A DNA stretch of 64,000 nt from Phyllobates terribilis. Its lineage: Eukaryota. Shown here piece by piece: positions 2,276-28,652 of the stretch; positions within the stretch are counted from its first letter, which is position 1, and each line of letters begins with the position of its first letter. Made by a program: the position numbers and the translations under genes. The stretch lies in contig NW_027362773.1 in NCBI RefSeq assembly GCF_046119375.1, positions 115,382,001 through 115,446,000 of the forward strand. The letters run 5' to 3'. The notes beneath the pieces were generated by a model, which was not told where the DNA came from, did not search any database, and saw only the letters and a list, made by a program, of their open reading frames with translations.

Positions 2276-2290
2276 CGGACTGTTCCCTTT

Positions 2291-2592: not shown

Positions 2593-2658
2593 AAGCTCCT
2601 ATCACCGTGGAGTCTTTACGGGTCACCACAACATAATCGTCCGATACCACATCCAATG

Positions 2659-3430: not shown

Positions 3431-3990
3431 GAGGGAGTGAGGCGTCCAAGCGCAGCTGATAGCTGATAGCGGAATGCTGCTCACTGGTGGGTGACCATGG
3501 CGGTCAGGGAGTTCGGAGGCTTCAGGACGGCGCTTATAAACAGCCTGTATAATGGAGGCCCTGCTGCTGGCTTCTCTGACTTCAACTAGGACTATAGTAA
3601 AATGTATCACCAGAGATGTAGGTCGGGCTCACACGTGACCCATGAATAAGGACTAGTGTCAATCCCAAACGCGTCAGCGTCATACACACCTTCAGTTTTT
3701 ATGACTTTTTTTTTATTTAATAAATTTGTTTTTTTGACTTACTGAGGATTTTCTGTTAGGTGCTGGACTTTGGTTTTTCCGGTTTCTCTGTTGCCTCCGT
3801 CGGGGGTCACACATTTCGCGGTCCGTGTACAGATCGCACAGCCTTCTAGACGTATATGAGGCGTTACGTTCGGATCGGGAGACCTGCGCTTAGTATACAG
3901 ACCGGGAAATGCGATCCTGGCCTTAGACTGGTTTCAGATGTCCGTGTTTCATAGCCGAGTACCCAGGCAATGATGCATGGACCGACCGCT

Positions 3991-6900
3991 GGTGTCCTGA
4001 CCCAGGCTCGGCAGTCTCATGGCCTTGGGTCTCCTGACCCAGGCTCTGCAATCTCATGGCCTGGGTCTCCTGACCCAGGATCGGCAGTCTCATGGCCGTG
4101 GGTCTCCTGACCCAGGCTCGGCAGTCTCATGGCCGCGGGTCTCCTGACCCAGGCACAGCAGTCTCATGGCCGTGGGTCTCCTGACCCAGTCTCGGCAGTC
4201 TCATGACCGCGGGTCTCCTGAGCCAGGCTCGGCAGTCTCATGACCGCGGGTCTCCTGAGCCAGGCTCGGCAATCTCATGGCCCTGGGTCTCCTGACCCAG
4301 GCTCTGCAATCTCATGGCCGTGGGTCTCCTGACCCAGGCTCTGCAGTCTCATGACCGCGGGTCTCCTGACCCAGGCTCAGCAGTCCCATCGCCGCGGGTC
4401 TCCTGACCCAGGCTCGGCAGCCCCATGGCCGCGGGTCTCCTGACACAAGCTCTGCATTCCCATGGCCACGGGTCTGCTGACCCAAGCCCTGAAGTCCCAT
4501 GGTCGCGGGTCTCCTGACCCAGGCTTGGCAGTCTCATGGCCGTGGGTCTCCTGACCCAGGCTCGGCAGTCTCATGGCCGTGGGTCTCCTGACCCATGCTC
4601 GGCAGTCTCATGGCCGCGGGTCTCCTGACCCAGGCTCGGCAGTCCCATGGCCGCGGGTCTCCTGACCCAGGCTCGGCAGTTCCATGGCCGCGGGTCTCCT
4701 GACCCAGGCTCGGCAGTCCCATGACCGCGGGTCTCCTGACCCAAACTCGGCAGTCCCATGGCCGCGGGTCTCGTGACCCATGCTCGGCAGTCTCATGGCC
4801 CCGGGTCTCCTGACCCAGGCTCGGCAGTCTCGTGGCCGCGGGTCTCCTGACCCAGGCTCAGCAGTCTCATGGCCGCGGGTCTCCTGACCCAGGCTCAGCA
4901 GTCTCATGGCCGCTGGTCTCCTGACCTAGGCTTGGCAATCCAATTGCCGCAGGTCTCCTGACCCAGGCTCGGCAGTCCCATGGTCGCGGGTCTCCTGACA
5001 CAAGCTCTACATTCCCATGGCCACGGGTCTGCTGACCCAAGCTCTGAAGTCCCATGGTCGCTGGTCTTCTGACCCATGCTCGGCAATCTCATGGTCGCGG
5101 GATTCCTGACCTTTGCTTGGCAATCCCATGGCCACGGGTCTGCTGACCCAAGCTCTGAAGTCCCATGGTCGCGGGTGTTCTGACCCAAGCTTGGCAGTCC
5201 CATGGCCACGGATCTCCTGACCCAGGCTCGGCAATCCCATGGTCGTGGGACTCCTGACCCATGCTCGGCAGGCCCATGGTCGCAGGTCTTCTGACCCAGG
5301 CTTGGCAGTCCTATGGTCGCGGGTCTCCTGACCCAGGCTCGGCAGTCCCATGGTCGCGAGTCTTCTGACCCAGGCTCGGCAGTCTCATGGCCGTGGGTCT
5401 CCTGACCCAGGCTCGGCAGTCTCATGGCCGTGGGTCTCCTGACTCAGGCTCGGCAGTCTCATGGCCGCGGGTCTCCTGACCCAAGCTCGGCAGTCTCATG
5501 GCCCCGGGTCTCCTGACCCAGGCTCGGCAGTCTCATGGCCGCGGGTCTCCTGACCCAGGCTCAGCAGTCTCATGGCTGCTGGTCTCCTGACCCAGGCTCG
5601 GCAATCCAATTGCCGCAGGTCTCCTGACCCAGGCTCGGCAGTCCCATGGTCGTGGGTCTCCTGACACAAGCTCTGCATTCCCATGGCCACGGGTCTGCTG
5701 ACCCAAGCTCTGAAGTCCCATGGTCGCGGGTCTCCTGACCCAGGCTCAGCAGTCTCATGGCCGCGGGTCTCCTGACCCAAGCTCGGCAGTCTCATGGCCC
5801 CGGGTCTCCTGACCCAGGCTCGGCAGTCTCATGGCCGCGGGTCTCCTGACCCAGGCTCAGCAGTCTCATGGCCGCTGGTCTCCTGACCTAGGCTTGGCAA
5901 TCCAATTGCCGCAGGTCTCCTGACCCAGGCTCGGCAGTCCCATGGTCGCGGGTCTCCTGACACAAGCTCTACATTCCCATGGCCACGGGTCTGCTGACCC
6001 AAGCTCTGAAGTCCCATGGTCGCTGGTCTTCTGACCCATGCTCGGCAATCTCATGGTCGCGGGATTCCTGACCTTTGCTTGGCAGTCCCATGGCCACGGG
6101 TCTGCTGACCCAAGCTCTGAAGTCCCATGGTCGCGGGTGTTCTGACCCAAGCTTGGCAGTCCCATGGCCACGGATCTCCTGACCCAGGCTCGGCAATCCC
6201 ATGGTCGTGGGACTCCTGACCCATGCTCGGCAGGCCCATGGTCGCAGGTCTTCTGACCCAGGCTTGGCAGTCCTATGGTCGCGGGTCTCCTGACCCAGGC
6301 TCGGCAGTCCCATGGTCGCGAGTCTTCTGACCCAGGCTCGGCAGTCTCATGGCCGTGGGTCTCCTGACCCAGGCTCGGCAGTCTCATGGCCCCGGGTCTC
6401 CTGACCCAGGCTCGGCAGTCTCATGGCCGCGGGTCTCCTGACCCAAGCTCGGCAGTCTCATGGCCGCGGGTCTCCTGACCCAGGCTCAGCAGTCTCATGG
6501 CCGCTGGTCTCCTGACCCAGGCTCGGCAATCCAATTGCCGCAGGTCTCCTGACCCAGGCTCGGCAATCCAATTGCCGCAGGTCTCCTGACCCAGGCTCGG
6601 CAGTCCCATGGTCGTGGGTCTCCTGACACAAGCTCTGCATTCCCATGGCCACGGGTCTGCTGACCCAAGCTCTGAAGTCCCATGGTCGCGGGTCTCCTGA
6701 CCCAGGCTTGGCAGTCTCATGGCCCCGGGTCTCCTGACCCAGGCTCGGCAGTCTCATGGCCGCGAGTCTCCTGACCCAGGCTCAGCAGTCTCATGGCCGC
6801 GGGTCTCCTGACCCAAGCTCGGCAGTCTCATGGCCCTGGGTCTCCTGACCCAGGCTCGGCAGTCTCTTGGCCGCGGGTCTCCTGACCCAGGCTCAGCAGT

Positions 6901-9900
6901 CTCATGGCCGCTGGTCTCCTGAGCCAGGCTCGGCAATCCAATTGCCGCAGGTCTCCTGACCCAGGCTCGGCAGTCCCATGGTCGTGGGTCTCCTGACACA
7001 AGCTCTGCATTCCCATGGCCACGGGTCTGCTGACCCAAGCTCTGAAGTCCCATGGTCGCAGGTCTCCTGACCCAGGCTTGGCAGTCTCATGGCCATGGGT
7101 CTCCTGACCCAGGCTCGGCAGTCTCATGGCCGTGGGTCTCCTGACCCAGGCTCGGCAGTCTCATGGCCGCGGGTCTCCTGACCCAGGCTCAGCAGTCTCA
7201 TGGCCGCAGGTCTCCTGACCCAGGCTCAGCAGTCTCATGGCCGCTGGTCTCCTGACCCAGGCTTGGCAATCCAATTGCCGCAGGTCTCCTGACCCAGGCT
7301 CGGCAGTCCCATGGTCGCGGGTCTCCTGACACAAGCTCTGCATTCCCATGGCCACGTGTCTGCTGACCCAAGCTCTGAAGTCCCATGGTCGCGGGTCTTC
7401 TGACCCAGGCTCGGCAATCTCATGGTCGCTGGATTCCTGACCTATGCTTGGCAGTCCCATGGCCACGGGTCTGCTGATCCAAGCTCTGAAGTCCCATGGT
7501 CGCGGGTGTTCTGACCCAAGCTTGGCAGTCCCATGGCCACGGATCTCCTGACCCAGGCTCGGCAATCCCATGGTCGTGGGACTCCTGACCCATGCTCGGC
7601 AGGCCCATGGTTGCAGGTCTTCTGACCCAGGCTTGGCAGTCCTATGGTCACGGGTCTCCTGACCCAGGCTCGGCAGTCCCATGGTCGCGGGTCTTCTGAC
7701 CCAGGCTCGGCAGTCTCATGGCCGTGGGTCTCCTGACCCAGGCTCGGCAGTCTCATGGCCCCGGGTCTCCTGACCCAGGCTCGGCAGTCTCATGGCCGCG
7801 GGTCTCCTGACCCAGGCTCAGCAGTCTCATGGCCGCGGGTCTCCTGACCCAGGCTCAGCAGTCTCATGGCCGCTGGTCTCCTGACCCAGGCTCGGCAATC
7901 CAATTGCCGCAGGTCTCCTGACCCAGGCTCGGCAATCCAATTGCCGCAGGTCTCCTGACCCAGGCTCGGCAGTCCCATGGTCGTGGGTCTCCTGACACAA
8001 GCTCTGCATTCCCATGGCCACGGGTCTGCTGACCCAAGCTCTGAAGTCCCATGGTCGCGGGTCTCCTGACCCAGGCTCTGCAGTCTCATGGCCGCTGGTC
8101 TCCTGACCCAGGCTCGGCAATCCAATTGCCGCAGGTCTCCTGACCCAGGCTCGGCAGTCCCATGGTCGTGGGTCTCCTGACACAAGCTCTGCATTCCCAT
8201 GGCCACGGGTCTGCTGACCCAAGCTCTGAAGTCCCATGGTCGCAGGTCTCCTGACCCAGGCTTGGCAGTCTCATGGCCATGGGTCTCCTGACCCAGGCTC
8301 GGCAGTCTCATGGCCGTGGGTCTCCTGACCCAGGCTCGGCAGTCTCATGGCCGCGGGTCTCCTGACCCAGGCTCAGCAGTCTCATGGCCGCGGGTCTCCT
8401 GACCCAGGCTCAGCAGTCTCATGGCCGCTGGTCTCCTGACCCAGGCTTGGCAATCCAATTGCCGCAGGTCTCCTGACCCAGGCTCGGCAGTCCCATGGTC
8501 GCGGGTCTCCTGACACAAGCTCTGCATTCCCATGGCCACGTGTCTGCTGACCCAAGCTCTGAAGTCCCATGGTCGCGGGTCTTCTGACCCAGGCTCGGCA
8601 ATCTCATGGTCGCGGGATTCCTGACCTATGCTTGGCAGTCCCATGGCCACGGGTCTGCTGACCCAAGCTCTGAAGTCCCATGGTCGCGGGTGTTCTGACC
8701 CAAGCTTGGCAGTCCCATGGCCACGGATCTCCTGACCCAGGCTCGGCAATCCCATGGTCGTGGGACTCCTGACCCATGCTCGGCAGGCCCATGGTTGCAG
8801 GTCTTCTGACCCAGGCTTGGCAGTCCTATGGTCACGGGTCTTCTGACCCAGGCTCGGCAGTCCCATGGCCGTGGGTCTCCTGACCCAGGCTCGGCAGTCT
8901 CATGGCCCCGGGTCTCCTGACCCAGGCTCGGCAGTCTCATGGCCGCGGGTCTCCTGACCCAGGCTCAGCAGTCTCATGGCCGCGGGTCTCCTGACCCAGG
9001 CTCAGCAGTCTCATGGCCGCTGGTCTCCTGACCCAGGCTCGGCAATCCAATTGCCGCAGGTCTCCTGACCCAGGCTCGGCAATCCAATTGCCGCAGGTCT
9101 CCTGACCCAGGCTCGGCAGTCCCATGGTCGTGGGTCTCCTGACACAAGCTCTGCATTCCCATGGCCACGGGTCTGCTGACCCAAGCTCTGAAGTCCCATG
9201 GTCGCGGGTCTCCTGACCCAGGCTCTGCAGTCTCATGGCCGCTGGTCTCCTGACCCAGGCTCGGCAATCCAATTGCCGCAGGTCTCCTGACCCAGGCTCG
9301 GCAGTCCCATGGTCGTGGGTCTCCTGACACAAGCTCTGCATTCCCATGGCCACGGGTCTGCTGACCCAAGCTCTGAAGTCCCATGGTCGCAGGTCTCCTG
9401 ACCCAGGCTTGGCAGTCTCATGGCCATGGGTCTCCTGACCCAGGCTCGGCAGTCTCATGGCCGTGGGTCTCCTGACCCAGGCTCGGCAGTCTCATGGCCG
9501 CGGGTCTCCTGACCCAGGCTCAGCAGTCTCATGGCCGCGGGTCTCCTGACCCAGGCTCAGCAGTCTCATGGCCGCTGGTCTCCTGACCCAGGCTTGGCAA
9601 TCCAATTGCCGCAGGTCTCCTGACCCAGGCTCGGCAGTCCCATGGTCGCGGGTCTCCTGACACAAGCTCTGCATTCCCATGGCCACGTGTCTGCTGACCC
9701 AAGCTCTGAAGTCCCATGGTCGCGGGTCTTCTGACCCAGGCTCGGCAATCTCATGGTCGCGGGATTCCTGACCTATGCTTGGCAGTCCCATGGCCACGGG
9801 TCTGCTGACCCAAGCTCTGAAGTCCCATGGTCGTGGGTGTTCTGACCCAAGCTTGGCAGTCCCATGGCCACGGATCTCCTGACCCAGGCTCGGCAATCCC

Positions 9901-12900
9901 ATGGTCGTGGGACTCCTGACCCATGCTCGGCAGGCCCATGGTTGCAGGTCTTCTGACCCAGGCTTGGCAGTCCTATGGTCACGGGTCTCCTGACCCAGGC
10001 TCGGCAGTCCCATGGTCGCGGGTCTTCTGACCCAGGCTCGGCAGTCTCATGGCCGTGGGTCTCCTGACCCAGGCTCGGCAGTCTCATGGCCCCGGGTCTC
10101 CTGACCCAGGCTCGGCAGTCTCATGGCCGCGGGTCTCCTGACCCAGGCTCAGCAGTCTCATGGCCGCGGGTCTCCTGACCCAGGCTCAGCAGTCTCATGG
10201 CCGCTGGTCTCCTGACCCAGGCTCGGCAATCCAATTGCCGCAGGTCTCCTGACCCAGGCTCGGCAATCCAATTGCCGCAGGTCTCCTGACCCAGGCTCGG
10301 CAGTCCCATGGTCGTGGGTCTCCTGACACAAGCTCTGCATTCCCATGGCCACGGGTCTGCTGACCCAAGCTCTGAAGTCCCATGGTCGCGGGTCTCCTGA
10401 CCCAGGCTCTGCAGTCTCATGGCCGCTGGTCTCCTGACCCAGGCTCGGCAATCCAATTGCCGCAGGTCTCCTGACCCAGGCTCGGCAGTCCCATGGTCGT
10501 GGGTCTCCTGACACAAGCTCTGCATTCCCATGGCCACGGGTCTGCTGACCCAAGCTCTGAAGTCCCATGGTCGCAGGTCTCCTGACCCAGGCTTGGCAGT
10601 CTCATGGCCATGGGTCTCCTGACCCAGGCTCGGCAGTCTCATGGCCGTGGGTCTCCTGACCCAGGCTCGGCAGTCTCATGGCCGCGGGTCTCCTGACCCA
10701 GGCTCAGCAGTCTCATGGCCGCGGGTCTCCTGACCCAGGCTCAGCAGTCTCATGGCCGCTGGTCTCCTGACCCAGGCTTGGCAATCCAATTGCCGCAGGT
10801 CTCCTGACCCAGGCTCGGCAGTCCCATGGTCGCGGGTCTCCTGACACAAGCTCTGCATTCCCATGGCCACTTGTCTGCTGACCCAAGCTCTGAAGTCCCA
10901 TGGTCGCGGGTCTTCTGACCCAGGCTCGGCAATCTCATGGTCGCGGGATTCCTGACCTATGCTTGGCAGTCCCATGGCCACGGGTCTGCTGACCCAAGCT
11001 CTGAAGTCCCATGGTCGTGGGTGTTCTGACCCAAGCTTGGCAGTCCCATGGCCACGGATCTCCTGACCCAGGCTCGGCAATCCCATGGTCGTGGGACTCC
11101 TGACCCATGCTCGGCAGGCCCATGGTTGCAGGTCTTCTGACCCAGGCTTGGCAGTCCTATGGTCACGGGTCTCCTGACCCAGGCTCGGCAGTCCCATGGT
11201 CGCGGGTCTTCTGACCCAGGCTCGGCAGTCTCATGGCCGTGGGTCTCCTGACCCAGGCTCGGCAGTCTCATGGCCCCGGGTCTCCTGACCCAGGCTCGGC
11301 AGTCTCATGGCCGCGGGTCTCCTGACCCAGGCTCAGCAGTCTCATGGCCGCGGGTCTCCTGACCCAGGCTCAGCAGTCTCATGGCCGCTGGTCTCCTGAC
11401 CCAGGCTCGGCAATCCAATTGCCGCAGGTCTCCTGACCCAGGCTCGGCAGTCCCATGGTCGTGGGTCTCCTGACACAAGCTCTGCATTCCCATGGCCACG
11501 GGTCTGCTGACCCAAGCTCTGAAGTCCCATGGTCGCGGGTCTCCTGACCCAGGCTTGGCAGTCTCATGGCCATGGGTCTCCTGACCCAGGCTCGACAGTC
11601 TCATGGCCGTGGGTCTCCTGACCCAGGCTCGGCAGTCTCATGGCCGTTGGTCTCCTGACCCAGGCTCGGCAGTCTCATTGCCGCGGGTCTCCTGACCCAG
11701 GCTCGGCAGTCCCATGGCCGCGGGTCTCCTGACCCAGGCTCGGCAGTCCCATGGCCGCGGGTCTCCTGACTCAAGCTCGGCAGTCCCATGGCCGCGGGTC
11801 TCCTGACCCAAGCTCGGCAGTCTCATGGCCCCGGGTCTCCTGACCCAGGCTCGGCAGTCTCATGGCCGCGGGTCTCCTGACCCAGGCTCGGCAGTCTCAT
11901 GGCCGCGGGTCTCCTGACCCAGGCTCAGCAGTCACATGGCCGCTGGTCTCCTGACCCAGGCTCGGCAATCCAATTGCCGCAGGTCTCCTGACCCAGGCTC
12001 GGCAGTCCCATGGTCGCGGGTCTCCTGACACAAGCTCTGCATTCCCATGGCCACGGGTCTGCTGACCCAAGCTCTGAAGTCCCATGGTCGCGGGTCTTCT
12101 GACCCAGGCTCGGCAATCTCATGGTCGCAGGATTCCTGACCAATGCTTGGCAGTCCAATGGCCACGGGTCTGCTGACCCAAGCTCTGAAGTCCCATGGTC
12201 GCGGGTGTTCTGACCCAAGCTTGGCAGTCCCATGGCCACGGATCTCCTGACCCAGGCTCGGCAATCCCATGGTCGTGGGACTCCTGACCCATGCTCGGCA
12301 GGCCCATGGTCGCAGGTCTTCTGACCCAGGCTTGGCAGTCCTATGGTCACGGGTCTCCTGACCCAGGCTTGGCAGTCCCATGGTCACGGGTCTTCTGACC
12401 CAGGCTCGGCAGTCTCATGACCGTGGGTCTCCTGACCCAGGCTCGGCAGTCCCATGGCCGCGGGTCTCCTGACCCAAGCTCGGCAGTCCCATGGCCGCGG
12501 GTCTCGTGACCCATGCTCGGCAGTCTCATGGCCCCGGGTCTCCTGACCCAGGCTCGGCAGTCTCATGGCCGCGGGTCTCCTGACCCAGGCTCAGCAGTCT
12601 CATGGCCGCGGGTCTCCTGACCCAGGCTCAGCAGTCTCATGGCCGCTGGTCTCCTGACCCAGGCTTGGCAATCCAATTGCCGCAGGTCTCCTGACCCAGG
12701 CTCGGCAGTCCCATGGTCGCGGGTCTCCTGACACAAGCTCTGCATTCCCATGGCCACGGGTCTGCTGACCCAAGCTCTGAAGTCCCATGGTCGCGGGTCT
12801 TCTGACCCATGCTCGGCAATCTCATGGTCGCGGGATTCCTGACCTTTGCTTGGCAGTCCCATGGCCACGGGTCTGCTGACCCAAGCTCTGAAGTCCCATG

Positions 12901-15900
12901 GTCGCGGGTGTTCTGACCCAAGCTTGGCAGTCCCATGGCCACGGATCTCCTGACCCAGGCTCGGCAATCCCATGGTCGTGGGACTCCTGACCCATGCTCG
13001 GCAGGCCCATGGTCGCAGGTCTTCTGACCCAGGCTTGGCAGTCCTATGGTCGCGGGTCTCCTGACCCAGGCTCGGCAGTCCCATGGTCGCGGGTCTTCTG
13101 ACCCAGGCTCGGCAGTCTCATGGCCGTGGGTCTCCTGAACCAGGCTCGGCAGTCTCATGGCCGTGGGTCTCCTGACCCAGGCTCGGCAGTCTCATGGCCG
13201 CGGGTCTCCTGACCCAAGCTCGGCAGTCTCATGGCCCCGGGTCTCCTGACCCAGGCTCGGCAGTCTCATGGCCGCGGGTCTCCTGACCCAGGCTCAGCAG
13301 TCTCATGGCCGCGGGTCTCCTGACCCAGGCTCAGCAGTCTCATGGCCGCTGGTCTCCTGACACAGGCTCGGCAATCCAATTGCCGCAGGTCTCCTGACCC
13401 AGGCTCAGCAGTCCCATGGTCGTGGGTCTCCTGACACAAGCTCTGCATTCGCATGGCCACGGGTCTGCTGACCCAAGCTCTGAAGTCCCATGGTCGTGGG
13501 TCTCCTGACCCAGGCTTGGCAGTCTCATGGCCATGGGTCTCCTGACCCAGGCTCGGCAGTCTCATGGCCGTGGGTCTCCTGACCCAGGCTCGGCAGTCTC
13601 ATGGCCGCGGGTCTCCTGACCGAGGCTCAGCAGTCTCATGGCCGCGGGTCTCCTGACCCAGGCTCAGCAGTCTCATGGCCGCTGGTCTCCTGACCCAGGC
13701 TTGGCAATCAAATTACCGCAGGTCTCCTGACCCAGGCTCGGCAGTCCCATGGTCGTGGGTCTCCTGACACAAGCTCTGCATTCCCATGGCCATGGGTCTG
13801 CTGACCCAAGCTCTGAAGTCCCATGGTCGCGGGTCTCCTGACCCAGGCTCAGCAGTCTCATGGCCGCTGGTCTCCTGACTCAGGCTCGGCAATCCAATTG
13901 CCGCAGGTCTCCTGACCCAGGCTCGGCAGTCCCATGGTCGTGGGTCTCCTGACACAAGCTCTGCATTCCCATGGCCACGGGTCTGCTGACCCAAGCTCTG
14001 AAGTCCCATGGTCGCAGGTCTCCTGAACCAGGCTTGGCAGTCTCATGGCCATGGGTCTCCTGACCCAGGCTCGGCAGTCTCATGGCCGCGGGTCTCCTGA
14101 CCCAGGCTCAGCAGTCTCATGGCCGCGGGTCTCCTGACCCAGGCTCAGCAGTCTCATGGCCGCTGGTCTCCTGACCCAGGCTCGGCAATCCAATTGCCGC
14201 AGGTCTCCTGACCCAGGCTCGGCAATCCAATTGCCGCAGGTCTCCTGACCCAGGCTCGGCAGTCCCATGGTCGTGGGTCTCCTGACACAAGCTCTGCATT
14301 CCCATGGCCACGGGTCTGCTGACCCAAGCTCTGAAGTCCCATGGTCGCGGGTCTCCTGACCCAGGCTCTGCAGTCTCATGGCCGCTGGTCTCCTGACCCA
14401 GGCTCGGCAATCCAATTGCCGCAGGTCTCCTGACCCAGGCTCGGCAGTCCCATGGTCGTGGGTCTCCTGACACAAGCTCTGCATTCCCATGGCCACGGGT
14501 CTGCTGACCCAAGCTCTGAAGTCCCATGGTCGCAGGTCTCCTGACCCAGGCTTGGCAGTCTCATGGCCATGGGTCTCCTGACCCAGGCTCGGCAGTCTCA
14601 TGGCCGTGGGTCTCCTGACCCAGGCTCGGCAGTCTCATGGCCGCGGGTCTCCTGACCCAGGCTCAGCAGTCTCATGGCCGCGGGTCTCCTGACCCAGGCT
14701 CAGCAGTCTCATGGCCGCGGGTCTCCTGACCCAGGCTCAGCAGTCTCATGGCCGCGGGTCTCCTGACCCAGGCTTGGCAATCCAATTGCCGCAGGTCTCC
14801 TGACCCAGGCTCGGCAGTCCCATGGTCGCGGGTCTCCTGACACAAGCTCTGCATTCCCATGGCCACGTGTCTGCTGACCCAAGCTCTGAAGTCCCATGGT
14901 CGCGGGTCTTCTGACCCAGGCTCGGCAATCTCATGGTCGCGGGATTCCTGACCTATGCTTGGCAGTCCCATGGCCACGGGTCTGCTGACCCAAGCTCTGA
15001 AGTCCCATGGTCGCGGGTGTTCTGACCCAAGCTTGGCAGTCCCATGGCCACGGATCTCCTGACCCAGGCTCGGCAATCCCATGGTCGTGGGACTCCTGAC
15101 CCATGCTCGGCAGGCCCATGGTTGCAGGTCTTCTGACCCAGGCTTGGCAGTCCTATGGTCACGGGTCTCCTGACCCAGGCTCGGCAGTCCCATGGTCGCG
15201 GGTCTTCTGACCCAGGCTCGGCAGTCTCATGGCCGTGGGTCTCCTGACCCAGGCTCGGCAGTCTCATGGCCCCGGGTCTCCTGACCCAGGCTCGGCAGTC
15301 TCATGGCCGCGGGTCTCCTGACCCAGGCTCAGCAGTCTCATGGCCGCGGGTCTCCTGACCCAGGCTCAGCAGTCTCATGGCCGCTGGTCTCCTGACCCAG
15401 GCTCGGCAATCCAATTGCCGCAGGTCTCCTGACCCAGGCTCGGCAATCCAATTGCCGCAGGTCTCCTGACCCAGGCTTGGCAGTCCCATGGTCGTGGGTC
15501 TCCTGACACAAGCTCTGCATTCCCATGGCCACGGGTCTGCTGACCCAAGCTCTGAAGTCCCATGGTCGCGGGTCTCCTGACCCAGGCTCTGCAGTCTCAT
15601 GGCCGCTGGTCTCCTGACCCAGGCTCGGCAATCCAATTGCCGCAGGTCTCCTGACCCAGGCTCGGCAGTCCCATGGTCGTGGGTCTCCTGACACAAGCTC
15701 TGCATTCCCATGGCCACGGGTCTGCTGACCCAAGCTCTGAAGTCCCATGGTCGCAGGTCTCCTGACCCAGGCTTGGCAGTCTCATGGCCATGGGTCTCCT
15801 GACCCAGGCTCGGCAGTCTCATGGCCGTGGGTCTCCTGACCCAGGCTCGGCAGTCTCATGGCCGCGGGTCTCCTGACCCAGGCTCAGCAGTCTCATGGCC

Positions 15901-18900: not shown

Positions 18901-21900
18901 GGTCTTCTGACCCAGGCTCGGCAATCTCATGGTCGCGGGATTCCTGACCTATGCTTGGCAGTCCCATGGCCACGGGTCTGCTGACCCAAGCTCTGAAGTC
19001 CCATGGTCGCGGGTGTTCTGACCCAAGCTTGGCAGTCCCATGGCCACGGATCTCCTGACCCAGGCTCGGCAATCCCATGGTCGTGGGACTCCTGACCCAT
19101 GCTTGGCAGGCCCATGGTTGCAGGTCTTCTGACCCAGGCTTGGCAGTCCTATGGTCACGGGTCTCCTGACCCAGGCTCGGCAGTCCCATGGTCGCGGGTC
19201 TTCTGACCCAGGCTCGGCAGTCTCATGGCCGTGGGTCTCCTGACCCAGGCTCGGCAGTCTCATGGCCCCGGGTCTCCTGACCCAGGCTCGGCAGTCTCAT
19301 GGCCGCGGGTCTCCTGACCCAGGCTCAGCAGTCTCATGGCCGCGGGTCTCCTGACCCAGGCTCAGCAGTCTCATGGCCGCTGGTCTCCTGACCCAGGCTC
19401 GGCAATCCAATTGCCGCAGGTCTCCTGACCCAGGCTCGGCAATCCAATTGCCGCAGGTCTCCTGACCCAGGCTCGGCAGTCCCATGGTCGTGGGTCTCCT
19501 GACACAAGCTCTGCATTCCCATGGCCACGGGTCTGCTGACCCAAGCTCTGAAGTCCCATGGTCGCGGGTCTCCTGACCCAGGCTTGGCAGTCTCATGGCC
19601 ATGGGTCTCCTGACCCAGGCTCGACAGTCTCATGGCCGTGGGTCTCCTGACCCAGGCTCGGCAGTCTCATGGCCGTGGGTCTCCTGACCCAGGCTCGGCA
19701 GTCTCATTGCCGCGGGTCTCCTGACCCAGGCTCGGCAGTCCCATGGCCGCGGGTCTCCTGACCCAGGCTCGGCAGTCCCATGGCCGCGGGTCTCCTGACT
19801 CAAGCTCGGCAGTCCCATGGCCGCGGGTCTCCTGACCCAAGCTCGGCAGTCTCATGGCCCCGGGTCTCCTGACCCAGGCTCGGCAGTCTCATGGCCGCGG
19901 GTCTCCTGACCCAGGCTCGGCAGTCTCATGGCCGCGGGTCTCCTGACCCAGGCTCAGCAGTCACATGGCCGCTGGTCTCCTGACCCAGGCTCGGCAATCC
20001 AATTGCCGCAGGTCTCCTGACCCAGGCTCGGCAGTCCCATGGTCGCGGGTCTCCTGACACAAGCTCTGCATTCCCATGGCCACGGGTCTGCTGACCCAAG
20101 CTCTGAAGTCCCATGGTCGCGGGTCTTCTGACCCAGGCTCGGCAATCTCATGGTCGCAGGATTCCTGACCAATGCTTGGCAGTCCAATGGCCACGGGTCT
20201 GCTGACCCAAGCTCTGAAGTCCCATGGTCGCGGGTGTTCTGACCCAAGCTTGGCAGTCCCATGGCCACGGATCTCCTGACCCAGGCTCGGCAATCCCATG
20301 GTCGTGGGACTCCTGACCCATGCTCGGCAGGCCCATGGTCGCAGGTCTTCTGACCCAGGCTTGGCAGTCCTATGGTCACGGGTCTCCTGACCCAGGCTCG
20401 GCAGTCCCATGGTCACGGGTCTTCTGACCCAGGCTCGGCAGTCTCATGACCGTGGGTCTCCTGACCCAGGCTCGGCAGTCCCATGGCCGCGGGTCTCCTG
20501 ACCCAAGCTCGGCAGTCCCATGGCCGCGGGTCTCGTGACCCATGCTCGGCAGTCTCATGGCCCCGGGTCTCCTGACCCAGGCTCGGCAGTCTCATGGCCG
20601 CGGGTCTCCTGACCCAGGCTCAGCAGTCTCATGGCCGCGGGTCTCCTGACCCAGGCTCAGCAGTCTCATGGCCGCTGGTCTCCTGACCCAGGCTTGGCAA
20701 TCCAATTGCCGCAGGTCTCCTGACCCAGGCTCGGCAGTCCCATGGTCGCGGGTCTCCTGACACAAGCTCTGCATTCCCATGGCCACGGGTCTGCTGACCC
20801 AAGCTCTGAAGTCCCATGGTCGCGGGTCTTCTGACCCATGCTCGGCAATCTCATGGTCGCGGGATTCCTGACCTTTGCTTGGCAGTCCCATGGCCACGGG
20901 TCTGCTGACCCAAGCTCTGAAGTCCCATGGTCGCGGGTGTTCTGACCCAAGCTTGGCAGTCCCATGGCCACGGATCTCCTGACCCAGGCTCGGCAATCCC
21001 ATGGTCGTGGGACTCCTGACCCATGCTCGGCAGGCCCATGGTCGCAGGTCTTCTGACCCAGGCTTGGCAGTCCTATGGTCGCGGGTCTCCTGACCCAGGC
21101 TCGGCAGTCCCATGGTCGCGGGTCTTCTGACCCAGGCTCGGCAGTCTCATGGCCGTGGGTCTCCTGAACCAGGCTCGGCAGTCTCATGGCCGTGGGTCTC
21201 CTGACCCAGGCTCGGCAGTCTCATGGCCGCGGGTCTCCTGACCCAAGCTCGGCAGTCTCATGGCCCCGGGTCTCCTGACCCAGGCTCGGCAGTCTCATGG
21301 CCGCGGGTCTCCTGACCCAGGCTCAGCAGTCTCATGGCCGCGGGTCTCCTGACCCAGGCTCAGCAGTCTCATGGCCGCGGGTCTCCTGACCCAGGCTCAG
21401 CAGTCTCATGGCCGCTGGTCTCCTGACCCAGGCTCGGCAATCCAATTGCCGCAGGTCTCCTGACCCAGGCTCAGCAGTCCCATGGTCGTGGGTCTCCTGA
21501 CACAAGCTCTGCATTCGCATGGCCACGGGTCTGCTGACCCAAGCTCTGAAGTCCCATGGTCGTGGGTGTCCTGACCCAGGCTTGGCAGTCTCATGGCCAT
21601 GGGTCTCCTGACCCAGGCTCGGCAGTCTCATGGCCGTGGGTCTCCTGACCCAGGCTCGGCAGTCTCATGGCCGCGGGTCTCCTGACCCAGGCTCAGCAGT
21701 CTCATGGCCGCGGGTCTCCTGACCCAGGCTCAGCAGTCTCATGGCCGCTGGTCTCCTGACCCAGGCTTGGCAATCAAATTACCGCAGGTCTCCTGACCCA
21801 GGCTCGGCAGTCCCATGGTCGTGGGTCTCCTGACACAAGCTCTGCATTCCCATGGCCACGGGTCTGCTGACCCAAGCTCTGAAGTCCCATGGTCGCGGGT

Positions 21901-24900
21901 CTCCTGACCCAGGCTCAGCAGTCTCATGGCCGCTGGTCTCCTGACTCAGGCTCGGCAATCCAATTGCCGCAGGTCTCCTGACCCAGGCTCGGCAGTCCCA
22001 TGGTCGTGGGTCTCCTGACACAAGCTCTGCATTCCCATGGCCACGGGTCTGCTGACCCAAGCTCTGAAGTCCCATGGTCGCATGTCTCCTGACCCAGGCT
22101 TGGCAGTCTCATGGCCATGGGTCTCCTGACCCAGGCTCGGCAGTCTCATGGCCGTGGGTCTCCTGACCCAGGCTCGGCAGTCTCATGGCCGCGGGTCTCC
22201 TGACCCAGGCTCAGCAGTCTCATGGCCGCGGGTCTCCTGACCCAGGCTCAGCAGTCTCATGGCCGCTGGTCTCCTGACCCAGGCTTGGCAATCCAATTGC
22301 CGCAGGTCTCCTGACCCAGGCTCGGCAGTCCCATGGTCGCGGGTCTCCTGACACAAGCTCTGCATTCCCATGGCCACGTGTCTGCTGACCCAAGCTCTGA
22401 AGTCCCATGGTCGCGGGTCTTCTGACCCAGGCTCGGCAATCTCATGGTCGCGGGATTCCTGACCTATGCTTGGCAGTCCCATGGCCACGGGTCTGCTGAC
22501 CCAAGCTCTGAAGTCCCATGGTCGCGGGTGTTCTGACCCAAGCTTGGCAGTCCCATAGCCACGGATCTCCTGACCCAGGCTCGGCAATCCCATGGTCGTG
22601 GGACTCCTGACCCATGCTTGGCAGGCCCATGGTTGCAGGTCTTCTGACCCAGGCTTGGCAGTCCTATGGTCACGGGTCTCCTGACCCAGGCTCGGCAGTC
22701 CCATGGTCGCGGGTCTTCTGACCCAGGCTCGGCAGTCTCATGGCCGTGGGTCTCCTGACCCAGGCTCGGCAGTCTCATGGCCCCGGGTCTCCTGACCCAG
22801 GCTCGGCAGTCTCATGGCCGCGGGTCTCCTGCCCCAGGCTCAGCAGTCTCATGGCCGCGGGTCTCCTGACCCAGGCTCAGCAGTCTCATGGCCGCTGGTC
22901 TCCTGACCCAGGCTCGGCAATCCAATTGCCGCAGGTCTCCTGACCCAGGCTCGGCAATCCAATTGCCGCAGGTCTCCTGACCCAGGCTCGGCAGTCCCAT
23001 GGTCGTGGGTCTCCTGACACAAGCTCTGCATTCCCATGGCCACGGGTCTGCTGACCCAAGCTCTGAAGTCCCATGGTCGCGGGTCTCCTGACCCAGGCTT
23101 GGCAGTCTCATGGCCATGGGTCTCCTGACCCAGGCTCGACAGTCTCATGGCCGTGGGTCTCCTGACCCAGGCTCGGCAGTCTCATGGCCGTGGGTCTCCT
23201 GACCCAGGCTCGGCAGTCTCATGGCCGCGGGTCTCCTGACCCAGGCTCGGCAGTCCCATGGCCGCGGGTCTCCTGACCCAGGCTCGGCAGTCCCATGGCC
23301 GCGGGTCTCCTGACTCAAGCTCGGCAGTCCCATGGCCGCGGGTCTCCTGACCCAAGCTCGGCAGTCTCATGGCCCCGGGTCTCCTGACCCAGGCTCGGCA
23401 GTCTCATGGCCGCGGGTCTCCTGACCCAGGCTCGGCAGTCTCATGGCCGCGGGTCTCCTGACCAAGGCTCAGCAGTCACATGGCCGCTGGTCTCCTGACC
23501 CAGGCTCGGCAATCCAATTGCCGCAGGTCTCCTGACCCAGTCTCGGCAGTCCCATGGTCGCGGGTCTCCTGACACAAGCTCTGCATTCCCATGGCCACGG
23601 GTCTGCTGACCCAAGCTCTGAAGTCCCATGGTCGCGGGTCTTCTGACCCAGGCTCGGCAATCTCATGGTCGCAGGATTCCTGACCAATGCTTGGCAGTCC
23701 AATGGCCACGGGTCTGCTGACCCAAGCTCTGAAGTCCCATGGTCGCGGGTGTTCTGACCCAAGCTTGGCAGTCCCATGGCCACGGATCTCCTGACCCAGG
23801 CTCGGCAATCCTATGGTCGTGGGACTCCTGACCCATGCTCGGCAGGCCCATGGTCGCAGGTTTTCTGACCCAGGCTTGGCAGTCCTATGGTCACGGGTCT
23901 CCTGACCCAGGCTCGGCAGTCCCATGGTCACGGGTCTTCTGACCCAGGCTCGGCAGTCTCATGACCGTGGGTCTCCTGACCCAGGCTCGGCAGTCCCATG
24001 GCCGCGGGTCTCCTGACCCAAGCTCGGCAGTCCCATGGCCGCGGGTCTCGTGACCCATGCTCGGCAGTCTCATGGCCCCGGGTCTCCTGACCCAGGCTCG
24101 GCAGTCTCATGGCCGCGGGTCTCCTGACCCAGGCTCAGCAGTCTCATGGCCGCGGGTCTCCTGACCCAGGCTCAGCAGTCTCATGGCCGCTGGTCTCCTG
24201 ACCCAGGCTTGGCAATCCAATTGCCTCAGGTCTCCTGACCCAGGCTCGGCAGTCCCATGGTCGCGGGTCTCCTGACACAAGCTCTGCATTCCCATGGCCA
24301 CGGGTCTGCTGACCCAAGCTCTGAAGTCCCATGGTCGCGGGTCTTCTGACCCATGCTCGGCAATCTCATGGTCGCGGGATTCCTGACCTTTGCTTGGCAG
24401 TCCCATGGCCACGGGTCTGCTGACCCAAGCTCTGAAGTCCCATGGTCGCGGGTGTTCTGACCCAAGCTTGGCAGTCCCATGGCCACGGATCTCCTGACCC
24501 AGGCTCGGCAATCCCATGGTCGTGGGACTCCTGACCCATGCTCGGCAGGCCCATGGTCGCAGGTCTTCTGACCCAGGCTTGGCAGTCCTATGGTCGCGGG
24601 TCTCCTGACCCAGGCTCGGCAGTCCCATGGTCGCGGGTCTTCTGACCCAGGCTTGGCAGTCTCATGGCCGTGGGTCTCCTGAACCAGGCTCGGCAGTCTC
24701 ATGGCCGTGGGTCTCCTGACCCAGGCTCTGCAGTCTCATGGCCGCGGGTCTCCTGACCCAAGCTCGGCAGTCTCATGGCCCCGGGTCTCCTGACCCAGGC
24801 TCGGCAGTCTCATGGCCGCGGGTCTCCTGACCCAGGCTCAGCAGTCTCATGGCCGCGGGTCTCCTGACCCAGGCTCAGCAGTCTCATGGCCGCTGGTCTC

Positions 24901-27900
24901 CTGACCCAGGCTCGGCAATCCAATTGCCGCAGGTCTCCTGACCCAGGCTCAGCAGTCCCATGGTCGTGGGTCTCCTGACACAAGCTCTGCATTCGCATGG
25001 CCACGGGTCTGCTGACCCAAGCTCTGAAGTCCCATGATCGTGGGTCTCCTGACCCAGGCTTGGCAGTCTCATGGCCATGGGTCTCCTGACCCAGGCTCGG
25101 CAGTCTCATGGCCGTGGGTCTCCTGACCCAGGCTCGGCAGTCTCATGGCCGCGGGTCTCCTGACCCAGGCTCAGCAGTCTCATGGCCGCGGGTCTCCTGA
25201 CCCAGGCTCAGCAGTCTCATGGCCGCTGGTCTCCTGACCCAGGCTTGGCAATCAAATTACCGCAGGTCTCCTGACCCAGGCTCGGCAGTCCCATGGTCGC
25301 GGGTCTCCTGACACAAGCTCTGCATTCCCATGGCCACGTGTCTGCTGACCCAAGCTCTGAAGTCCCATGGTCGCAGGTCTTCTGACCCAGGCTCGGCAAT
25401 CTCATGGTCGCGGGATTCCTGACCTATGCTTGGCAGTCCCATGGCCACGGGTCTGCTGACCCAAGCTCTGAAGTCCCATAGTCGCGGGTGTTCTGACCCA
25501 AGCTTGGCAGTCCCATGGCCACGGATCTCCTGACCCAGGCTCGGCAATCCCATGGTCGTGGGACTCCTGACCCATGCTCGGCAGGCCCATGGTCGCAGGT
25601 CTTCTGACCCAGGCTTGGCAGTCCTATGGTCACGGGTCTCCTGACCCAGGCTCGGCAGTCTCATGGCCGTGGGTCTCCTGACCCAGGCTCGGCAGTCTCA
25701 TGGCCCCGGGTCTCCTGACCCAGGCTCGGCAGTCTCATGGCCGCGGGTCTCCTGACCCAGGCTCAGCAGTCTCATGGCCGCGGGTCTCCTGACCCAGGCT
25801 CAGCAGTCTCATGGCCGCTGGTCTCCTGACCCAGGCTCGGCAATCCAATTGCCGCAGGTCTCCTGACCCAGGCTCGGCAATCCAATTGCCGCAGGTCTCC
25901 TGACCCAGGCTCGGCAGTCCCATGGTCGTGGGTCTCCTGACACAAGCTCTGCATTCCCATGGCCACGGGTCTGCTGACCCAAGCTCTGAAGTCCCATGGT
26001 CGCGGGTCTCCTGACCCAGGCTTGGCAGTCTCATGGCCATGGGTCTCCTGACCCAGGCTCGGCAGTCTCATGGCCGTGGGTCTCCTGACCCAGGTTCGGC
26101 AGTCTCATGGCCGTGGGTCTCCTGACCCAGGCTCGGCAGTCTCTTGGCCGCGGGTCTCCTGACCCAGGCTCGGCAGTCCCATGGCCGCGGGTCTCCTGAC
26201 CCAGGCTCGGCAGTCCCATGGCCGCGGGTCTCCTGACCCAAGCTCGGCAGTCTCATGGCCCCGGGTCTCCTGACCCAGGCTCGGCAGTCTCATGGCCGCG
26301 GGTCTCCTGACCCAGGCTCGGCAGTCTCATGGCCGCGGGTCTCCTGACCCAGGCTCAGCAGTCACATGGCCGCTGGTCTCCTGACCCAGGCTCGGCAATC
26401 CAATTGCCGCAGGTCTCCTGACCCAGGCTTGGCAGTCCCATGGTCGCGGGTCTCCTGACACAAGCTCTGCATTCCCATGGCCACGGATCTGCTGACCCAA
26501 GCTCTGAAGTCCCATGGTCGCGGGTCTTCTGACCCAGGCTCGGCAATCTCATGGTCGCAGGATTCCTGACCAATGCTTGGCAGTCCAATGGCCACGGGTC
26601 TGCTAACCCAAGCTCTGAAGTCCCATGGTCGCGGGTGTTCTGACCTAAGCTTGGCAGTCCCATGGCCACGGATCTCCTGACCCAGGCTCGGCAATCCCAT
26701 GGTCGTGGGACTCCTGACCCATGCTCGGCAGGCCCATGGTCGCAGGTCTTCTGACCCAGGCTTGGCAGTCCTATGGTCACGGGTCTCCTGACCCAGGCTC
26801 GGCAGTCCCATGACCGTGGGTCTCCTGACCCAGTCTCGGCAGTCTCATGGCCGTGGGTCTCCTGACCCAGGCTTGGCAGTCTCATGGCCGCGGGTCTCCT
26901 GACCCAGGCTCGGCAGTCCCATGGCCTCGGGTCTCCTGACCCAGGCTCGGCAGTCCCATGGCCGCGGGTCTCCTGACCCAAGCTCGGCAGTCCCATGGCC
27001 ACGGGTTTCCTGACCCAAGCTCGGCAGTCTCATGGCCCCGGGTCTCCTGACCCAGGCTCGGCAGTCTCATGGCCCCGGGTCTCTTGACCCAGGCTCAGCA
27101 GTCCCATGGTCGCGGGTCTCCTGACACAAGCTCAGCATTCCCATGGCCACGGGTCTGCTGACCCAAGCTCTGAAGTCCCATGGTCGCGGGTCTTCTGACC
27201 CAGGCTCGGCAGTCCCATGGTCGCGGGTCTTCTGACCCAGGCTCGGCAGTCTCATGGCCGTGGGTCTCCTGACCCAGGCTCGGCAGTCTCATGGCCGTGG
27301 GTCTCCTGACCCAGGCTCGGCAGTCTCATGGCCGTGGGTCTCCTGACCGCGGGTCTCATGGCCGCGGGTCTCCTGACCCAAGCTCGGCAGTCTCATGGCC
27401 CCGGGTCTCCTGACCCAGGCTCGGCAGTCTCATGGCCGCGGGTCTCCTGACCCAGGCTCAGCAGTCTCATGGCCGCGGGTCTCCTGACTCAGGCTCGGCA
27501 ATCCAATTGCCGCAGGTCTCCTGACCCAAGCTCGGCAGTCCCATGGTCGCGGGTCTCCTGACACAAGCTCTGCATTCCCATGGCCACGGGTCTGCTGACC
27601 CAAGCTCTGAAGTCCCATGGTCGCGGGTCTTCTGACCCAGGCTCGGCAGTCCCATGGCCGCGGGTCTCCTGACCCAGGCTCGGCAGTCTCATGGCCGCGG
27701 GTCTCCTGACCCAGGCTCGGCAATCCAATTGCCGCAGGTCTCCTGACCCAGGCTCGGCAGTCCCATGGCTGCGGGTCTCCTGACCCAAGCTCGGCAGTCT
27801 CATGGCCCCGGGTCTCCTGACCCAGGCTTGGCAGTCTCATGGTCGCGGGTCTCCTGACCCAGGCTCAGCAGTCTCATGGCCGCGGGTCTCCTGACCCAGG

Positions 27901-28652
27901 CTCAGCAGTCTCATGGCCGCTGGTCTCCTGACCCAGGCTCTGCAATCCAATTGCCGCAGGTCTCCTGACCCAGGCTCGGCAGTCCCATGGTCGCGGGTCT
28001 CCTGACCCAGGCTCAGCAGTTCCATGGCCGCAGGTCTCCTGACCCAGGCTCAGCAGTCTCATGGCCGCTGGTCTCCTGACCCAGGCTCGGCAATCCAATT
28101 GCCGCAGGTCTTCTGACCCAGGCTTGGCAGTCCTATGGTCACGGGTCTCCTGACCCAGGCTCGGCAGTCACATGGTCGCGGGTCTTCTGACCCAAGCTCG
28201 GCCGTCCCACGGCCACGGGTCTCCTGACCCAGGCTTGGCAGTCTTATGACCGCGGGTCAGCTCACCCAAGCTCTGCATTTCCATGGTCGCGGGTCTCCTG
28301 ACCCAAGCTCTGCATTCCCATGGTCGCGGGTCTCCTGACACAAGCTCTGCATTCCCATGGTCGCAGGTCTCCTGACACAAGCTCTGCATCCCCATGGCCG
28401 CGGGTCTGCTGACCCAAGCTCTGAAGTCCCATGGTCGCGGGTCTTCTGACCCAGGCTCGGCAGTCCCATGGTCGCGGGTCTTCTGACCCAGGCTCGGCAG
28501 TCCCATGGTCGCGGGTCTTCTGACCCAGGCTTGGCAGTCCCATGGCCTCGGGTCTCCTGACCCAAGCTCGGCAGTCCCATGGCGCGAGTGTCCTGACCCA
28601 GGCTCGGCTGTCCTATGGCCACAGGTCTCCTGATCGGAGCTAGCCAGTCTCA
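3991..28652. repeat. 37-bp GC-rich satellite array (~666 copies) with higher-order repeats
   Basis: Consensus ggtctcctgacccaggctcggcagtctcatggccgcg. Recurrent pseudo-ORFs are offset by exact multiples of 37 (962, 1147, 1184, 2812, 3515, 5217, 8029). Confidence 0.99.

What the first reader, a model, noticed from the sequence alone, without database searches (positions are those of the whole stretch)
4860..27000. Alphoid-like nested higher-order repeat code within the satellite
Diagnostic monomer variants recur in fixed order: caatccaattgccgcagg, gacacaagctctgcattcc, ggtctgctgacccaagctctgaag, ggattcctgacc, ggtgttctg, ggatctcctg, gggactcc..caggccc, cagtcctatgg. They form a short 4-5-mer block and a long ~12-mer block. 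These assemble into 26-mer (962), 31-mer (1147) and 32-mer (1184) units, with super-periods of 76, 95, 141 and 217 monomers (2812, 3515, 5217, 8029 bp). One variant has three alleles (acctttgc, acctatgc, accaatgc) that mark HOR subfamilies, so the duplication history is readable.
Basis: seen in the sequence. Interest (0 to 1): 0.75.

Follow-up and report, generated by a model that had tools for sequence, protein, structure and literature searches.

The report
Nested higher-order repeats in frog minisatellite
A 24.7-kb single-locus array of a GC-rich 37-bp repeat in a frog genome really is built from ordered blocks nested in larger units, which is the ordinary footprint of repeated unequal recombination and not a centromere-like device or a code.

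Summary
Window 3986-28655 holds 667 head-to-tail 37-bp monomers, and only 3 of them, all near the edges, differ in length. Every claimed period (26, 31, 32, 76, 95, 141, 217 monomers) is a long near-identical diagonal. The best is 117 monomers at lag 95, against at most 6 in shuffles and 28 in Markov chains.

All blocks share a core (E-B-F-C) with tails of different length. They build a 32-mer repeat (about 3.5 copies) and five super-units of 141, 76, 95, 79 and 44 monomers. The "super-periods" are these lengths and their sums.

The TTT/TAT/AAT alleles mark three paralogous long-block subfamilies, in fixed order within each super-unit.

Block-sized differences join inside shared tracts of 3-8 monomers. 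The array edges are degenerate. CpG transitions dominate the variation. Contig depth in two other individuals fits this one locus.

It is best read as a locus-specific, GC-rich giant minisatellite next to a CpG island, shaped by in-register unequal exchange. "Alphoid-like" holds only as a formal analogy.

The scan has noted other higher-order satellites in this genome, on different DNA (inside hAT transposons). It has no note of this repeat elsewhere.

The parts
3986..28655 (.). Whole 37-bp tandem array, 667 monomers. Consensus CCGCGGGTCTCCTGACCCAGGCTCGGCAGTCCCATGG, 64% GC, CpG o/e 0.49.
   Evidence: TRF; decomposition; composition
3986..4391 (.). Left degenerate edge (monomers 0-10), mostly singleton variants. 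Includes a 36-bp monomer at 4023.
   Evidence: 60% singletons in the first 30 monomers against 9% in the interior
4392..6907 (.). Zone with two TTT-type long blocks. The 26-monomer (962 bp) repeat is 4873-5427 against 5835-6389 (1 mismatch in 555 bp).
6908..11421 (.). Zone of the 31/32-monomer HOR. Each unit is a long TAT block (17-18 monomers), a 5-mer block and a 9-mer block; about 3.5 copies. The youngest pair, 8869-10237 against 10053-11421, has 1 mismatch in 1369 bp.
11422..16638 (.). Super-unit 1, 141 monomers. It contains extra 5-mer, 9-mer and long-TAT blocks.
16639..19450 (.). Super-unit 2, 76 monomers. It lacks the 19-monomer AAT long block. The junction lies in the shared 8-monomer tract H-A-A-E-B-F-C-G (monomers 353-360).
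19451..22965 (.). Super-unit 3, 95 monomers. This is the full pattern: M15, Q19 (AAT), T20 (TTT), n'9, s5, n9, A18 (TAT).
22966..25888 (.). Super-unit 4, 79 monomers. It lacks the 5-mer and 9-mer blocks. The junction lies in the shared B-F-C core.
25889..27509 (.). Super-unit 5, 44 monomers; truncated and more diverged (2-3% from the others). Includes a 30-bp monomer at 27332.
27510..28655 (.). Right degenerate edge (monomers 636-666), 50-70% singleton variants.
28667..28693 (-). Diverged partial monomer in inverted orientation, 11 bp beyond the array end. It is 78% complementary to 28590-28616, so the junction is a foldback.
   Evidence: DNA fold of 28585-28700: -23.1 kcal/mol, z -3.5
2950..3985 (.). 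CpG-island-like, single-copy left flank (CpG o/e 0.8-1.1) with CRE- and ETS-like motifs. A degenerate proto-monomer lies at about 3955-3985.
   Evidence: single-copy depth in two other individuals

Best explanation
This is a locus-specific, GC-rich giant minisatellite (37 bp x 667 = 24.7 kb) in a frog genome. It starts about 0.4 kb from a CpG island. Its nested higher-order structure is the historical record of repeated in-register unequal homologous exchange between misaligned copies (unequal crossing-over, sister-chromatid exchange or gene conversion).

Inferred order of events:
1. An old 37-bp array diverged into about 16 monomer types, largely by CpG deamination.
2. Blocks sharing the E-B-F-C core acquired tails of different length (5, 9, 15 and 17-20 monomers).
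3. The long block triplicated into AAT, TTT and TAT paralogues, which are 1-3% apart.
4. A super-unit of about 95 monomers (M, Q, T, n', s, n, A) amplified to five copies. These are 0.3-0.6% apart and differ by whole-block gains and losses whose junctions lie in shared tracts of 111-296 bp.
5. The 32-mer (A, s, n) amplified most recently (0.07-0.4% apart).

The edges escaped homogenisation and decayed. No function is needed to explain the pattern, and I take the array to be neutral, fast-evolving DNA.

Shown here: the structure, the statistics, the homology at the junctions, the edge decay, the CpG bias and the single-locus depth. Inferred: the recombination mechanism, the order of events and the neutrality.
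For: - Perfect 37-bp register: there are no length variants in the interior, so every rearrangement is a whole number of monomers.
- Hierarchy of identities: monomer types differ by about 15% (mean 5.6 of 37). Long-block paralogues differ by 1-3%. Super-units 1-4 differ by 0.3-0.6% in four of the six pairwise alignments; in a fifth (SU1-SU2, 0.64%) the monomer alignment is fragmented and in the sixth (SU2-SU4, 3.2%) it slipped register. The youngest 32-mers differ by 0.07%.
- Long-range order exceeds a local grammar: a diagonal of 117 monomers against a maximum of 28 in Markov chains.
- Three of three large block indels have junctions inside shared tracts. The 19-monomer Q block falls in H-A-A-E-B-F-C-G, where the lag-76 and lag-95 runs overlap at monomers 353-360. 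The 14-monomer indel falls in B-F-C. The 47-monomer insertion falls in B-F-C-A-E-B-F-C.
- Edge effect: singleton variants make up 60% of the first 30 monomers, 50% of monomers 630-659 and 71% of the last seven, against 9% in the interior.
- CpG sites carry three times more transitions than other sites. CpG o/e is 0.49 in the array and 0.8-1.1 in the adjacent island.
- In two other individuals the flank is single-copy. Array depth is 0.5-0.6 times what this one array predicts, so there is no large family elsewhere.
- One 177-bp contig carries a base (T at 5172) at about 6-fold single-copy depth in individual X5. The reference has 8 copies with C and none with T. This is consistent with multi-copy turnover within the species.
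- In frogs, which lack PRDM9, GC-rich tandem repeats correlate with recombination, and unequal crossing-over is the proposed driver of their expansion (PMC10794172).
Against: - The long-range arrangement rests on one assembly. Logan contigs are at most 177 bp inside the array, so they confirm local monomer order only.
- The recombination mechanism is inferred from sequence pattern and not observed. Replication slippage or break-induced replication could leave similar junctions.
- Neutrality is assumed. The near-invariant core T-CTGAC and the position beside a promoter-like island leave some room for a role.
- The chromosomal position (subtelomeric or not) is unknown.
Confidence: 0.82

Rival explanations
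1. The array was born from a transposon-internal or hairpin-forming repeat, as in other satellites of this genome that sit inside hAT elements. It then grew by the same unequal exchange. This concerns the origin and is compatible with the main explanation.
For: - Earlier notes on this genome describe several HOR satellites inside hAT transposons.
- An inverted, diverged partial monomer lies 11 bp beyond the array end, so the right junction is a foldback.
- Tc1 relics lie nearby.
Against: - No terminal inverted repeats or direct duplications bracket the array.
- The left flank is single-copy in two other individuals.
- The monomer matches nothing else in the 39 kb of flanks except the adjacent inverted copy.
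- No transposase lies next to the array.
Confidence: 0.12
2. It is a functional centromere-type (alphoid-like) satellite whose HOR is maintained for kinetochore function.
For: Only the formal resemblance: diverged monomers arranged in highly identical multi-monomer units.
Against: - The monomer is 37 bp and the array only 24.7 kb. The units are irregular in length.
- The array is flanked within 0.4 kb by a CpG island, and within 12-25 kb by a WD40 exon and a TMEM70-family exon.
- Contig depth fits a single locus.
- The centromeric tandem repeats of Xenopus tropicalis were identified by Cenp-a binding and lack the TGGG-type tetramers typical of the recombining subtelomeric repeats (PMC10794172).
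Confidence: 0.02
3. The higher-order arrangement is partly an assembly artefact: mis-joined or duplicated near-identical blocks.
For: Super-units are 99.4-99.9% identical over 2-4 kb, which is hard to assemble. I could not lay long reads, because only contigs were served.
Against: - The structure is internally coherent. Paralogue-specific diagnostic sites recur in the same order in each super-unit, junctions lie in homologous tracts, and divergence is graded.
- There are no gaps or N in the array.
- Local monomer order is confirmed in independent individuals.
Confidence: 0.05
4. The array is a regulatory device. It could be a tandem bank of binding sites, since each monomer has an imperfect palindrome GGGTC-TCCT-GACCC containing a GGGTCA-type half-site. 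Or it could be a methylated CpG-rich buffer that modulates the adjacent promoter.
For: - Positions 13-15 (TGA) are invariant in 665-667 of 667 monomers, and the core is retained in the inverted flank copy.
- The array abuts a CpG island.
- Earlier notes in this genome report motif-bearing minisatellites near promoters; these are leads only.
Against: - The invariance is expected when about 16 monomer types were amplified recently.
- The hairpin is no more stable than in shuffled sequence (z -1.3 to -1.6).
- No RNA contig covers the array in the one putative RNA run that was laid.
- No binding data exist.
Confidence: 0.05

Closest known systems
GC-rich hypervariable minisatellites (VNTRs) with interspersed variant repeats, as mapped by MVR-PCR in human loci such as MS32 or CEB1 (from my own knowledge, not tested here)
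   Same: The unit is in the 10-100 bp range and GC-rich. Arrays reach tens of kb. Variant repeats are interspersed in informative order. Change is by in-register unequal exchange or conversion. The repeat is locus-specific.
   Different: This array, at 667 units, is at the upper end of the size range. It shows three clear nested levels with units of up to 141 monomers. G-quadruplex potential is weak: there are two G3 runs per unit on the minus strand, 12 and 19 nt apart. Germline instability is not measured.
Recombination-associated GC-rich tandem repeats of frog extended subtelomeres (Xenopus tropicalis v10; PMC10794172)
   Same: It is a frog genome and a GC-rich tandem array. The monomer carries TGGG twice on the minus strand, one of the tetramers reported as enriched in those repeats. 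Unequal crossing-over is the proposed mode of expansion.
   Different: The chromosomal position of this window is unknown. The sequence is unrelated to any described repeat: no paper holds the monomer. Nested HOR structure was not the subject of that paper.
Primate alpha-satellite higher-order repeats
   Same: Diverged monomer types (about 15% apart here) are arranged in fixed order in units that are above 99% identical to each other. The array edges are more diverged than the core.
   Different: The monomer is 37 bp, not about 171 bp. The array is 24.7 kb, not megabases. Unit length is variable. It is a single non-centromeric-looking locus beside a CpG island. There is no CENP-B box or CENP-A evidence.
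Transposon-born HOR satellites noted elsewhere in this genome (earlier notes s1-198884 and others)
   Same: Same genome, and a layered higher-order structure in a tandem array of tens of kb.
   Different: Those have roughly 113-203-bp units inside hAT elements. Here the unit is 37 bp, and no transposon frame was found around the array.

Membership tests
Alpha-satellite-type centromeric HOR array | Nucleosome-sized monomer (about 170 bp) | tested here: not met
   The period is 37 bp throughout.
Alpha-satellite-type centromeric HOR array | Regular multi-monomer unit repeated in tandem at 95-100% identity | tested here: inconclusive
   The 32-mer has about 3.5 copies at above 99.5% identity. The five super-units are 99.4-99.7% identical but have unequal lengths of 141, 76, 95, 79 and 44 monomers.
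Alpha-satellite-type centromeric HOR array | Megabase-scale, multi-locus or centromeric location with CENP-A or CENP-B association | tested here: not met
   The array is 24.7 kb, next to a CpG island and near genes. Depth in other individuals is no more than this one array predicts. CENP-A binding itself is not testable here.
GC-rich minisatellite / VNTR | Tandem unit of 10-100 bp, GC-rich, at a single locus | tested here: met
   37 bp, 64% GC. The flank is single-copy and depth fits one locus.
GC-rich minisatellite / VNTR | Interspersed variant repeats whose order records in-register exchange | tested here: met
   There are 123 distinct monomers among the first 632, clustering into about 16 main types in ordered blocks. 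Indel junctions lie in shared tracts.
GC-rich minisatellite / VNTR | Length or structure polymorphism between individuals | tested here: inconclusive
   A multi-copy variant (5172 C>T) differs between individuals, and word shares are 0.41-0.65. Contigs cannot measure array length.
Transposon-derived satellite | Array lies inside a recognisable element (TIRs, TSD, transposase or multi-copy flanks) | tested here: not met
   There is no TIR or direct repeat across the array, and the left flank is single-copy. The copy number of the right flank was not tested.

The most novel reading that the evidence does not exclude
The array could be a promoter-adjacent recombination hotspot minisatellite in a PRDM9-less vertebrate. 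On this reading, exchange is initiated at the neighbouring CpG island. The resulting nested HOR would differ array-wide between individuals and between sister species: the long-tail block types gave no contig in the related organism B. That would make it a natural, readable recorder of meiotic unequal exchange in frogs.
Probability: 0.15. Interest if true: 0.5.

Novelty: new member of a known kind. Interest (0 to 1): 0.3.

Why it matters
The array is an unusually clean example of tandem-array evolution. It has no indels and three nested levels, and the homology at each exchange junction can be identified. It shows the expected features in a short-unit, non-centromeric repeat of a giant frog genome: homogenised core, decayed edges, CpG decay and exchange within shared tracts. 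It could serve as a marker locus for measuring unequal exchange in a species without PRDM9. It does not reveal a new kind of element or a function.

Tried and rejected
- Coding: the 151-215-aa ORFs on the minus strand inside the array come from a stop-poor 37-bp unit whose frame rotates at every monomer. Rejected.
- RNA families: there is no Rfam match anywhere in the window.
- Transposon frame: BLAST of left against right flank, and a dedicated search for inverted and direct matches of at least 8 bp within about 1 kb of each junction, gave only chance-level hits.
But no C2H2, TGEKP or KRAB signature occurs in any frame, so I could not connect the two.
- Transcription: the one putative RNA run that was laid has low-depth contigs at 2311-3111 only, and nothing real on the array. 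This is uninformative rather than negative.
- Secondary structure: the monomer hairpin is not significant.
- Literature: no paper holds the monomer sequence. The P. terribilis draft-genome paper does not mention tandem repeats or satellites.
- Findings search by sequence was blank.
Full report
**What is there**

Tandem Repeats Finder reports one array at 3986-28633, with period 37, 666 copies, 86% matches and 0% indels. It is 64-65% GC, against about 40% in the flanks. My own walk along the consensus CCGCGGGTCTCCTGACCCAGGCTCGGCAGTCCCATGG gives 667 monomers from 3986 to 28655. Only three have an odd length: 36 bp at 4023, 30 bp at 27332 and 36 bp at 28546. All three lie in the outer parts of the array. 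The first 632 monomers hold 123 distinct sequences. Average-linkage clustering groups all monomers into about 16 main types, which I lettered A to Q.

**Check of the observation**

In all 19 long blocks the diagnostic variants lie at identical offsets from ggattcctgacc: +37, +74, +110, +147 and +206 bp.

In monomer space, each claimed period is a long diagonal of monomers with at most 1 mismatch:

| Lag (monomers) | Regions compared | Length (monomers) | Mismatches |
|---|---|---|---|
| 26 | 4873-5427 vs 5835-6389 | 15 | 1 |
| 31 | 7722-8868 vs 8869-10015 | 31 | 2 |
| 32 | 8869-10237 vs 10053-11421 | 37 | 1 |
| 76 | 15455-17341 vs 18267-20153 | 51 | 12 |
| 95 | 17046-21374 vs 20561-24889 | 117 | 18 |
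| 141 | 11385-12124 vs 16602-17341 | 20 | 5 |
| 217 | 11385-13345 vs 19414-21374 | 53 | 3 |

At base level, lag 3515 bp has the highest identity of all lags, above even lag 37. Shuffling the monomer order gives longest diagonals of 4.1 on average (maximum 6). A first-order Markov chain on exact monomers, which keeps local grammar, gives 17.5 (maximum 28). The observed value is 117.

**Anatomy**

The letter string, cut at each B-F-C core, shows 49 blocks of four kinds, all sharing the core E-B-F-C:

- s: B-F-C-A-E, 5 monomers.
- n and n': B-F-C-J-D-D-A-A-E or -S, 9-10 monomers.
- M: B-F-C-J-D-D-D-B-B-B-B-H-A-A-E, 14-15 monomers.
- Long blocks: B-F-C-G-(O/Q)-C-N-L-M-K-I..., mostly 17-20 monomers; the last of the 19, at the decayed right end, runs to 30.

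From left to right the array reads:

1. A degenerate edge (monomers 0-10).
2. A zone with two TTT-type long blocks 26 monomers apart.
3. About 3.5 copies of a 31/32-mer (long TAT block, then s, then n) at 6908-11421.
4. Five super-units, each starting with an M block, at 11422, 16639, 19451, 22966 and 25889. Their lengths are 141, 76, 95, 79 and 44 monomers.
5. A degenerate edge (27510-28655).

The full super-unit pattern is M15, Q19 (AAT), T20 (TTT), n'9, s5, n9, A18 (TAT), which adds up to 95 monomers. They are not independent periodicities.

**The three alleles**

ACCTTTGC, ACCTATGC and ACCAATGC occur 6, 9 and 4 times in the array. Pairwise distances over 481 bp of the 19 long blocks cluster them by allele.

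I then removed the allele-bearing monomer entirely. The within-group distance is 4.8 and the between-group distance 8.8 per 444 bp. None of 10000 label permutations reached that gap. At least seven other sites co-segregate with the allele.

So these are three real paralogous subfamilies. They occupy fixed successive positions (AAT, then TTT, then TAT) inside each super-unit. The triplication of the long block therefore predates the amplification of the super-unit.

**Mechanism**

The identities are graded:

- Monomer types are about 15% apart (mean 5.6 of 37).
- Long-block paralogues are 1-3% apart.
- Super-units 1-4 are 0.3-0.6% apart in four of the six pairwise alignments. In a fifth (SU1-SU2, 0.64%) the monomer alignment is fragmented, and in the sixth (SU2-SU4, 3.2%) it slipped register.
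- The youngest 32-mers are 0.07% apart.

All rearrangements are whole numbers of monomers. The three large block differences all have their junctions inside shared tracts:

- The 19-monomer Q block missing from super-unit 2: the lag-76 and lag-95 diagonals overlap over monomers 353-360 (H-A-A-E-B-F-C-G, 296 bp).
- The 14-monomer s+n loss in super-unit 4: the junction is in B-F-C (111 bp).
- The 47-monomer insertion in super-unit 1: the junction is in B-F-C-A-E-B-F-C.

This is the signature of homologous, in-register unequal exchange.

Singleton variants make up 60% of the first 30 monomers, 50% of monomers 630-659 and 71% of the last seven, but only 9% of the interior. This is the classical edge effect of arrays homogenised by unequal exchange.

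CpG positions carry three times more transitions than other positions. CpG o/e is 0.49 in the array, against 0.8-1.1 in the 1 kb just upstream. The array therefore behaves as methylated DNA next to an unmethylated island, and much of the 'diagnostic' variation is CpG decay.

**Context and copy number**

- Left of the array lie a 30-bp x 5 repeat (2693-2849) and a CpG-island-like stretch with CRE- and ETS-like motifs.
- To the right lie Tc1/mariner relics, a WD40-like exon (about 40.6-40.9 kb, minus strand) and a TMEM70/TMEM186/TMEM223-family exon at 52.4-52.9 kb.
- No Rfam family matches anywhere in the window.
- Earlier notes of the scan call the genome the golden poison frog. I could not verify the name, because run labels are coded.

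Contigs of two other individuals of the same organism cover the left flank at single-copy depth, with a few SNPs. Over the array they reach only 0.5-0.6 times the depth predicted from the 31-mer multiplicity of this one array. So the repeat is essentially locus-specific and not a genome-wide or centromeric family.

One 177-bp contig in individual X5 carries T at 5172 at about six times single-copy depth. The reference has eight copies with C and none with T. This hints at multi-copy turnover within the species.

A run of a second organism (B) holds contigs identical or nearly identical to the E-B-F-C core and the common types, but none over the G-O-C-N-L part of the long block. Contigs prove presence only, so this is a hint that the long block is younger.

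The one putative RNA run that was laid shows nothing real on the array.

**Origin**

No terminal inverted repeats, target duplications or multi-copy flanks frame the array. A transposon origin, as noted for other satellites of this genome, is therefore not supported here, though the right flank's copy number was not tested.

A diverged partial monomer lies in inverted orientation 11 bp past the array end (28667-28693), so the junction is a foldback (z -3.5). A degenerate proto-monomer precedes the first unit. The seed may have been a small inverted duplication. This remains open.

**Comparison and verdict**

Formally the organisation resembles alpha-satellite HORs: diverged monomers in units that are above 99% identical. 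But the monomer size, array size, irregular units, single locus and genic surroundings fail the defining features of that family.

The closest known kinds are two:

- GC-rich hypervariable minisatellites with interspersed variant repeats (from my own knowledge).
- The recombination-associated GC-rich tandem repeats of frogs, for which unequal crossing-over in PRDM9-less genomes has been proposed (PMC10794172).

No paper holds the monomer sequence, and the published draft-genome paper does not discuss tandem repeats.

The finding is real and neatly readable, but it is a new member of a known kind. I score interest at 0.3.

The main caveat is that the long-range block order rests on a single assembly. 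I could lay only short contigs on it, not long reads.

Noticed in passing
window 2693-2849: A 30-bp x 5.2 tandem repeat, 99% identical. In individual X6 a contig joins 2685 to 2851 and skips the whole array, so copy number looks polymorphic. In the run of organism B the same stretch has a word depth of about 3300, so the motif is very abundant there.
   Followed up: partly
window 45013-45795: A 49-bp x 16 GC-rich tandem repeat, 97% identical, inside a 55% GC stretch. It may be another promoter-side minisatellite near the WD40-like gene on the minus strand.
   Followed up: no
window 32458-32654: A 51-bp x 4 tandem repeat (81% matches) in a GC-rich patch with long stop-free frames.
   Followed up: no
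window 1894-2287: This stretch has 45-150 times single-copy depth in two individuals' contigs, so it is a high-copy interspersed repeat just upstream of the CpG island.
   Followed up: no
window 2311-3111: Low-depth contigs (3-7x) of a run guessed to be RNA tile this stretch up to the edge of the CpG island. This could be a leftward first exon or non-coding transcript, or DNA carry-over.
   Followed up: no
window 38711-39776 and 47947-48965 (minus strand): Two Tc1/mariner transposase relics with HTH_Tnp_Tc3_2 and DDE_3 hits. More fragments lie at 29385-29726 and 33236-33920.
   Followed up: partly
window 52407-52883 (+): An open frame with a TMEM70/TMEM186/TMEM223 family match (E 1.2e-12), probably an exon of a host gene.
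   Followed up: no
window 58132-58304, 62491-62653, 63175-63309: Three runs of N.
   Followed up: no
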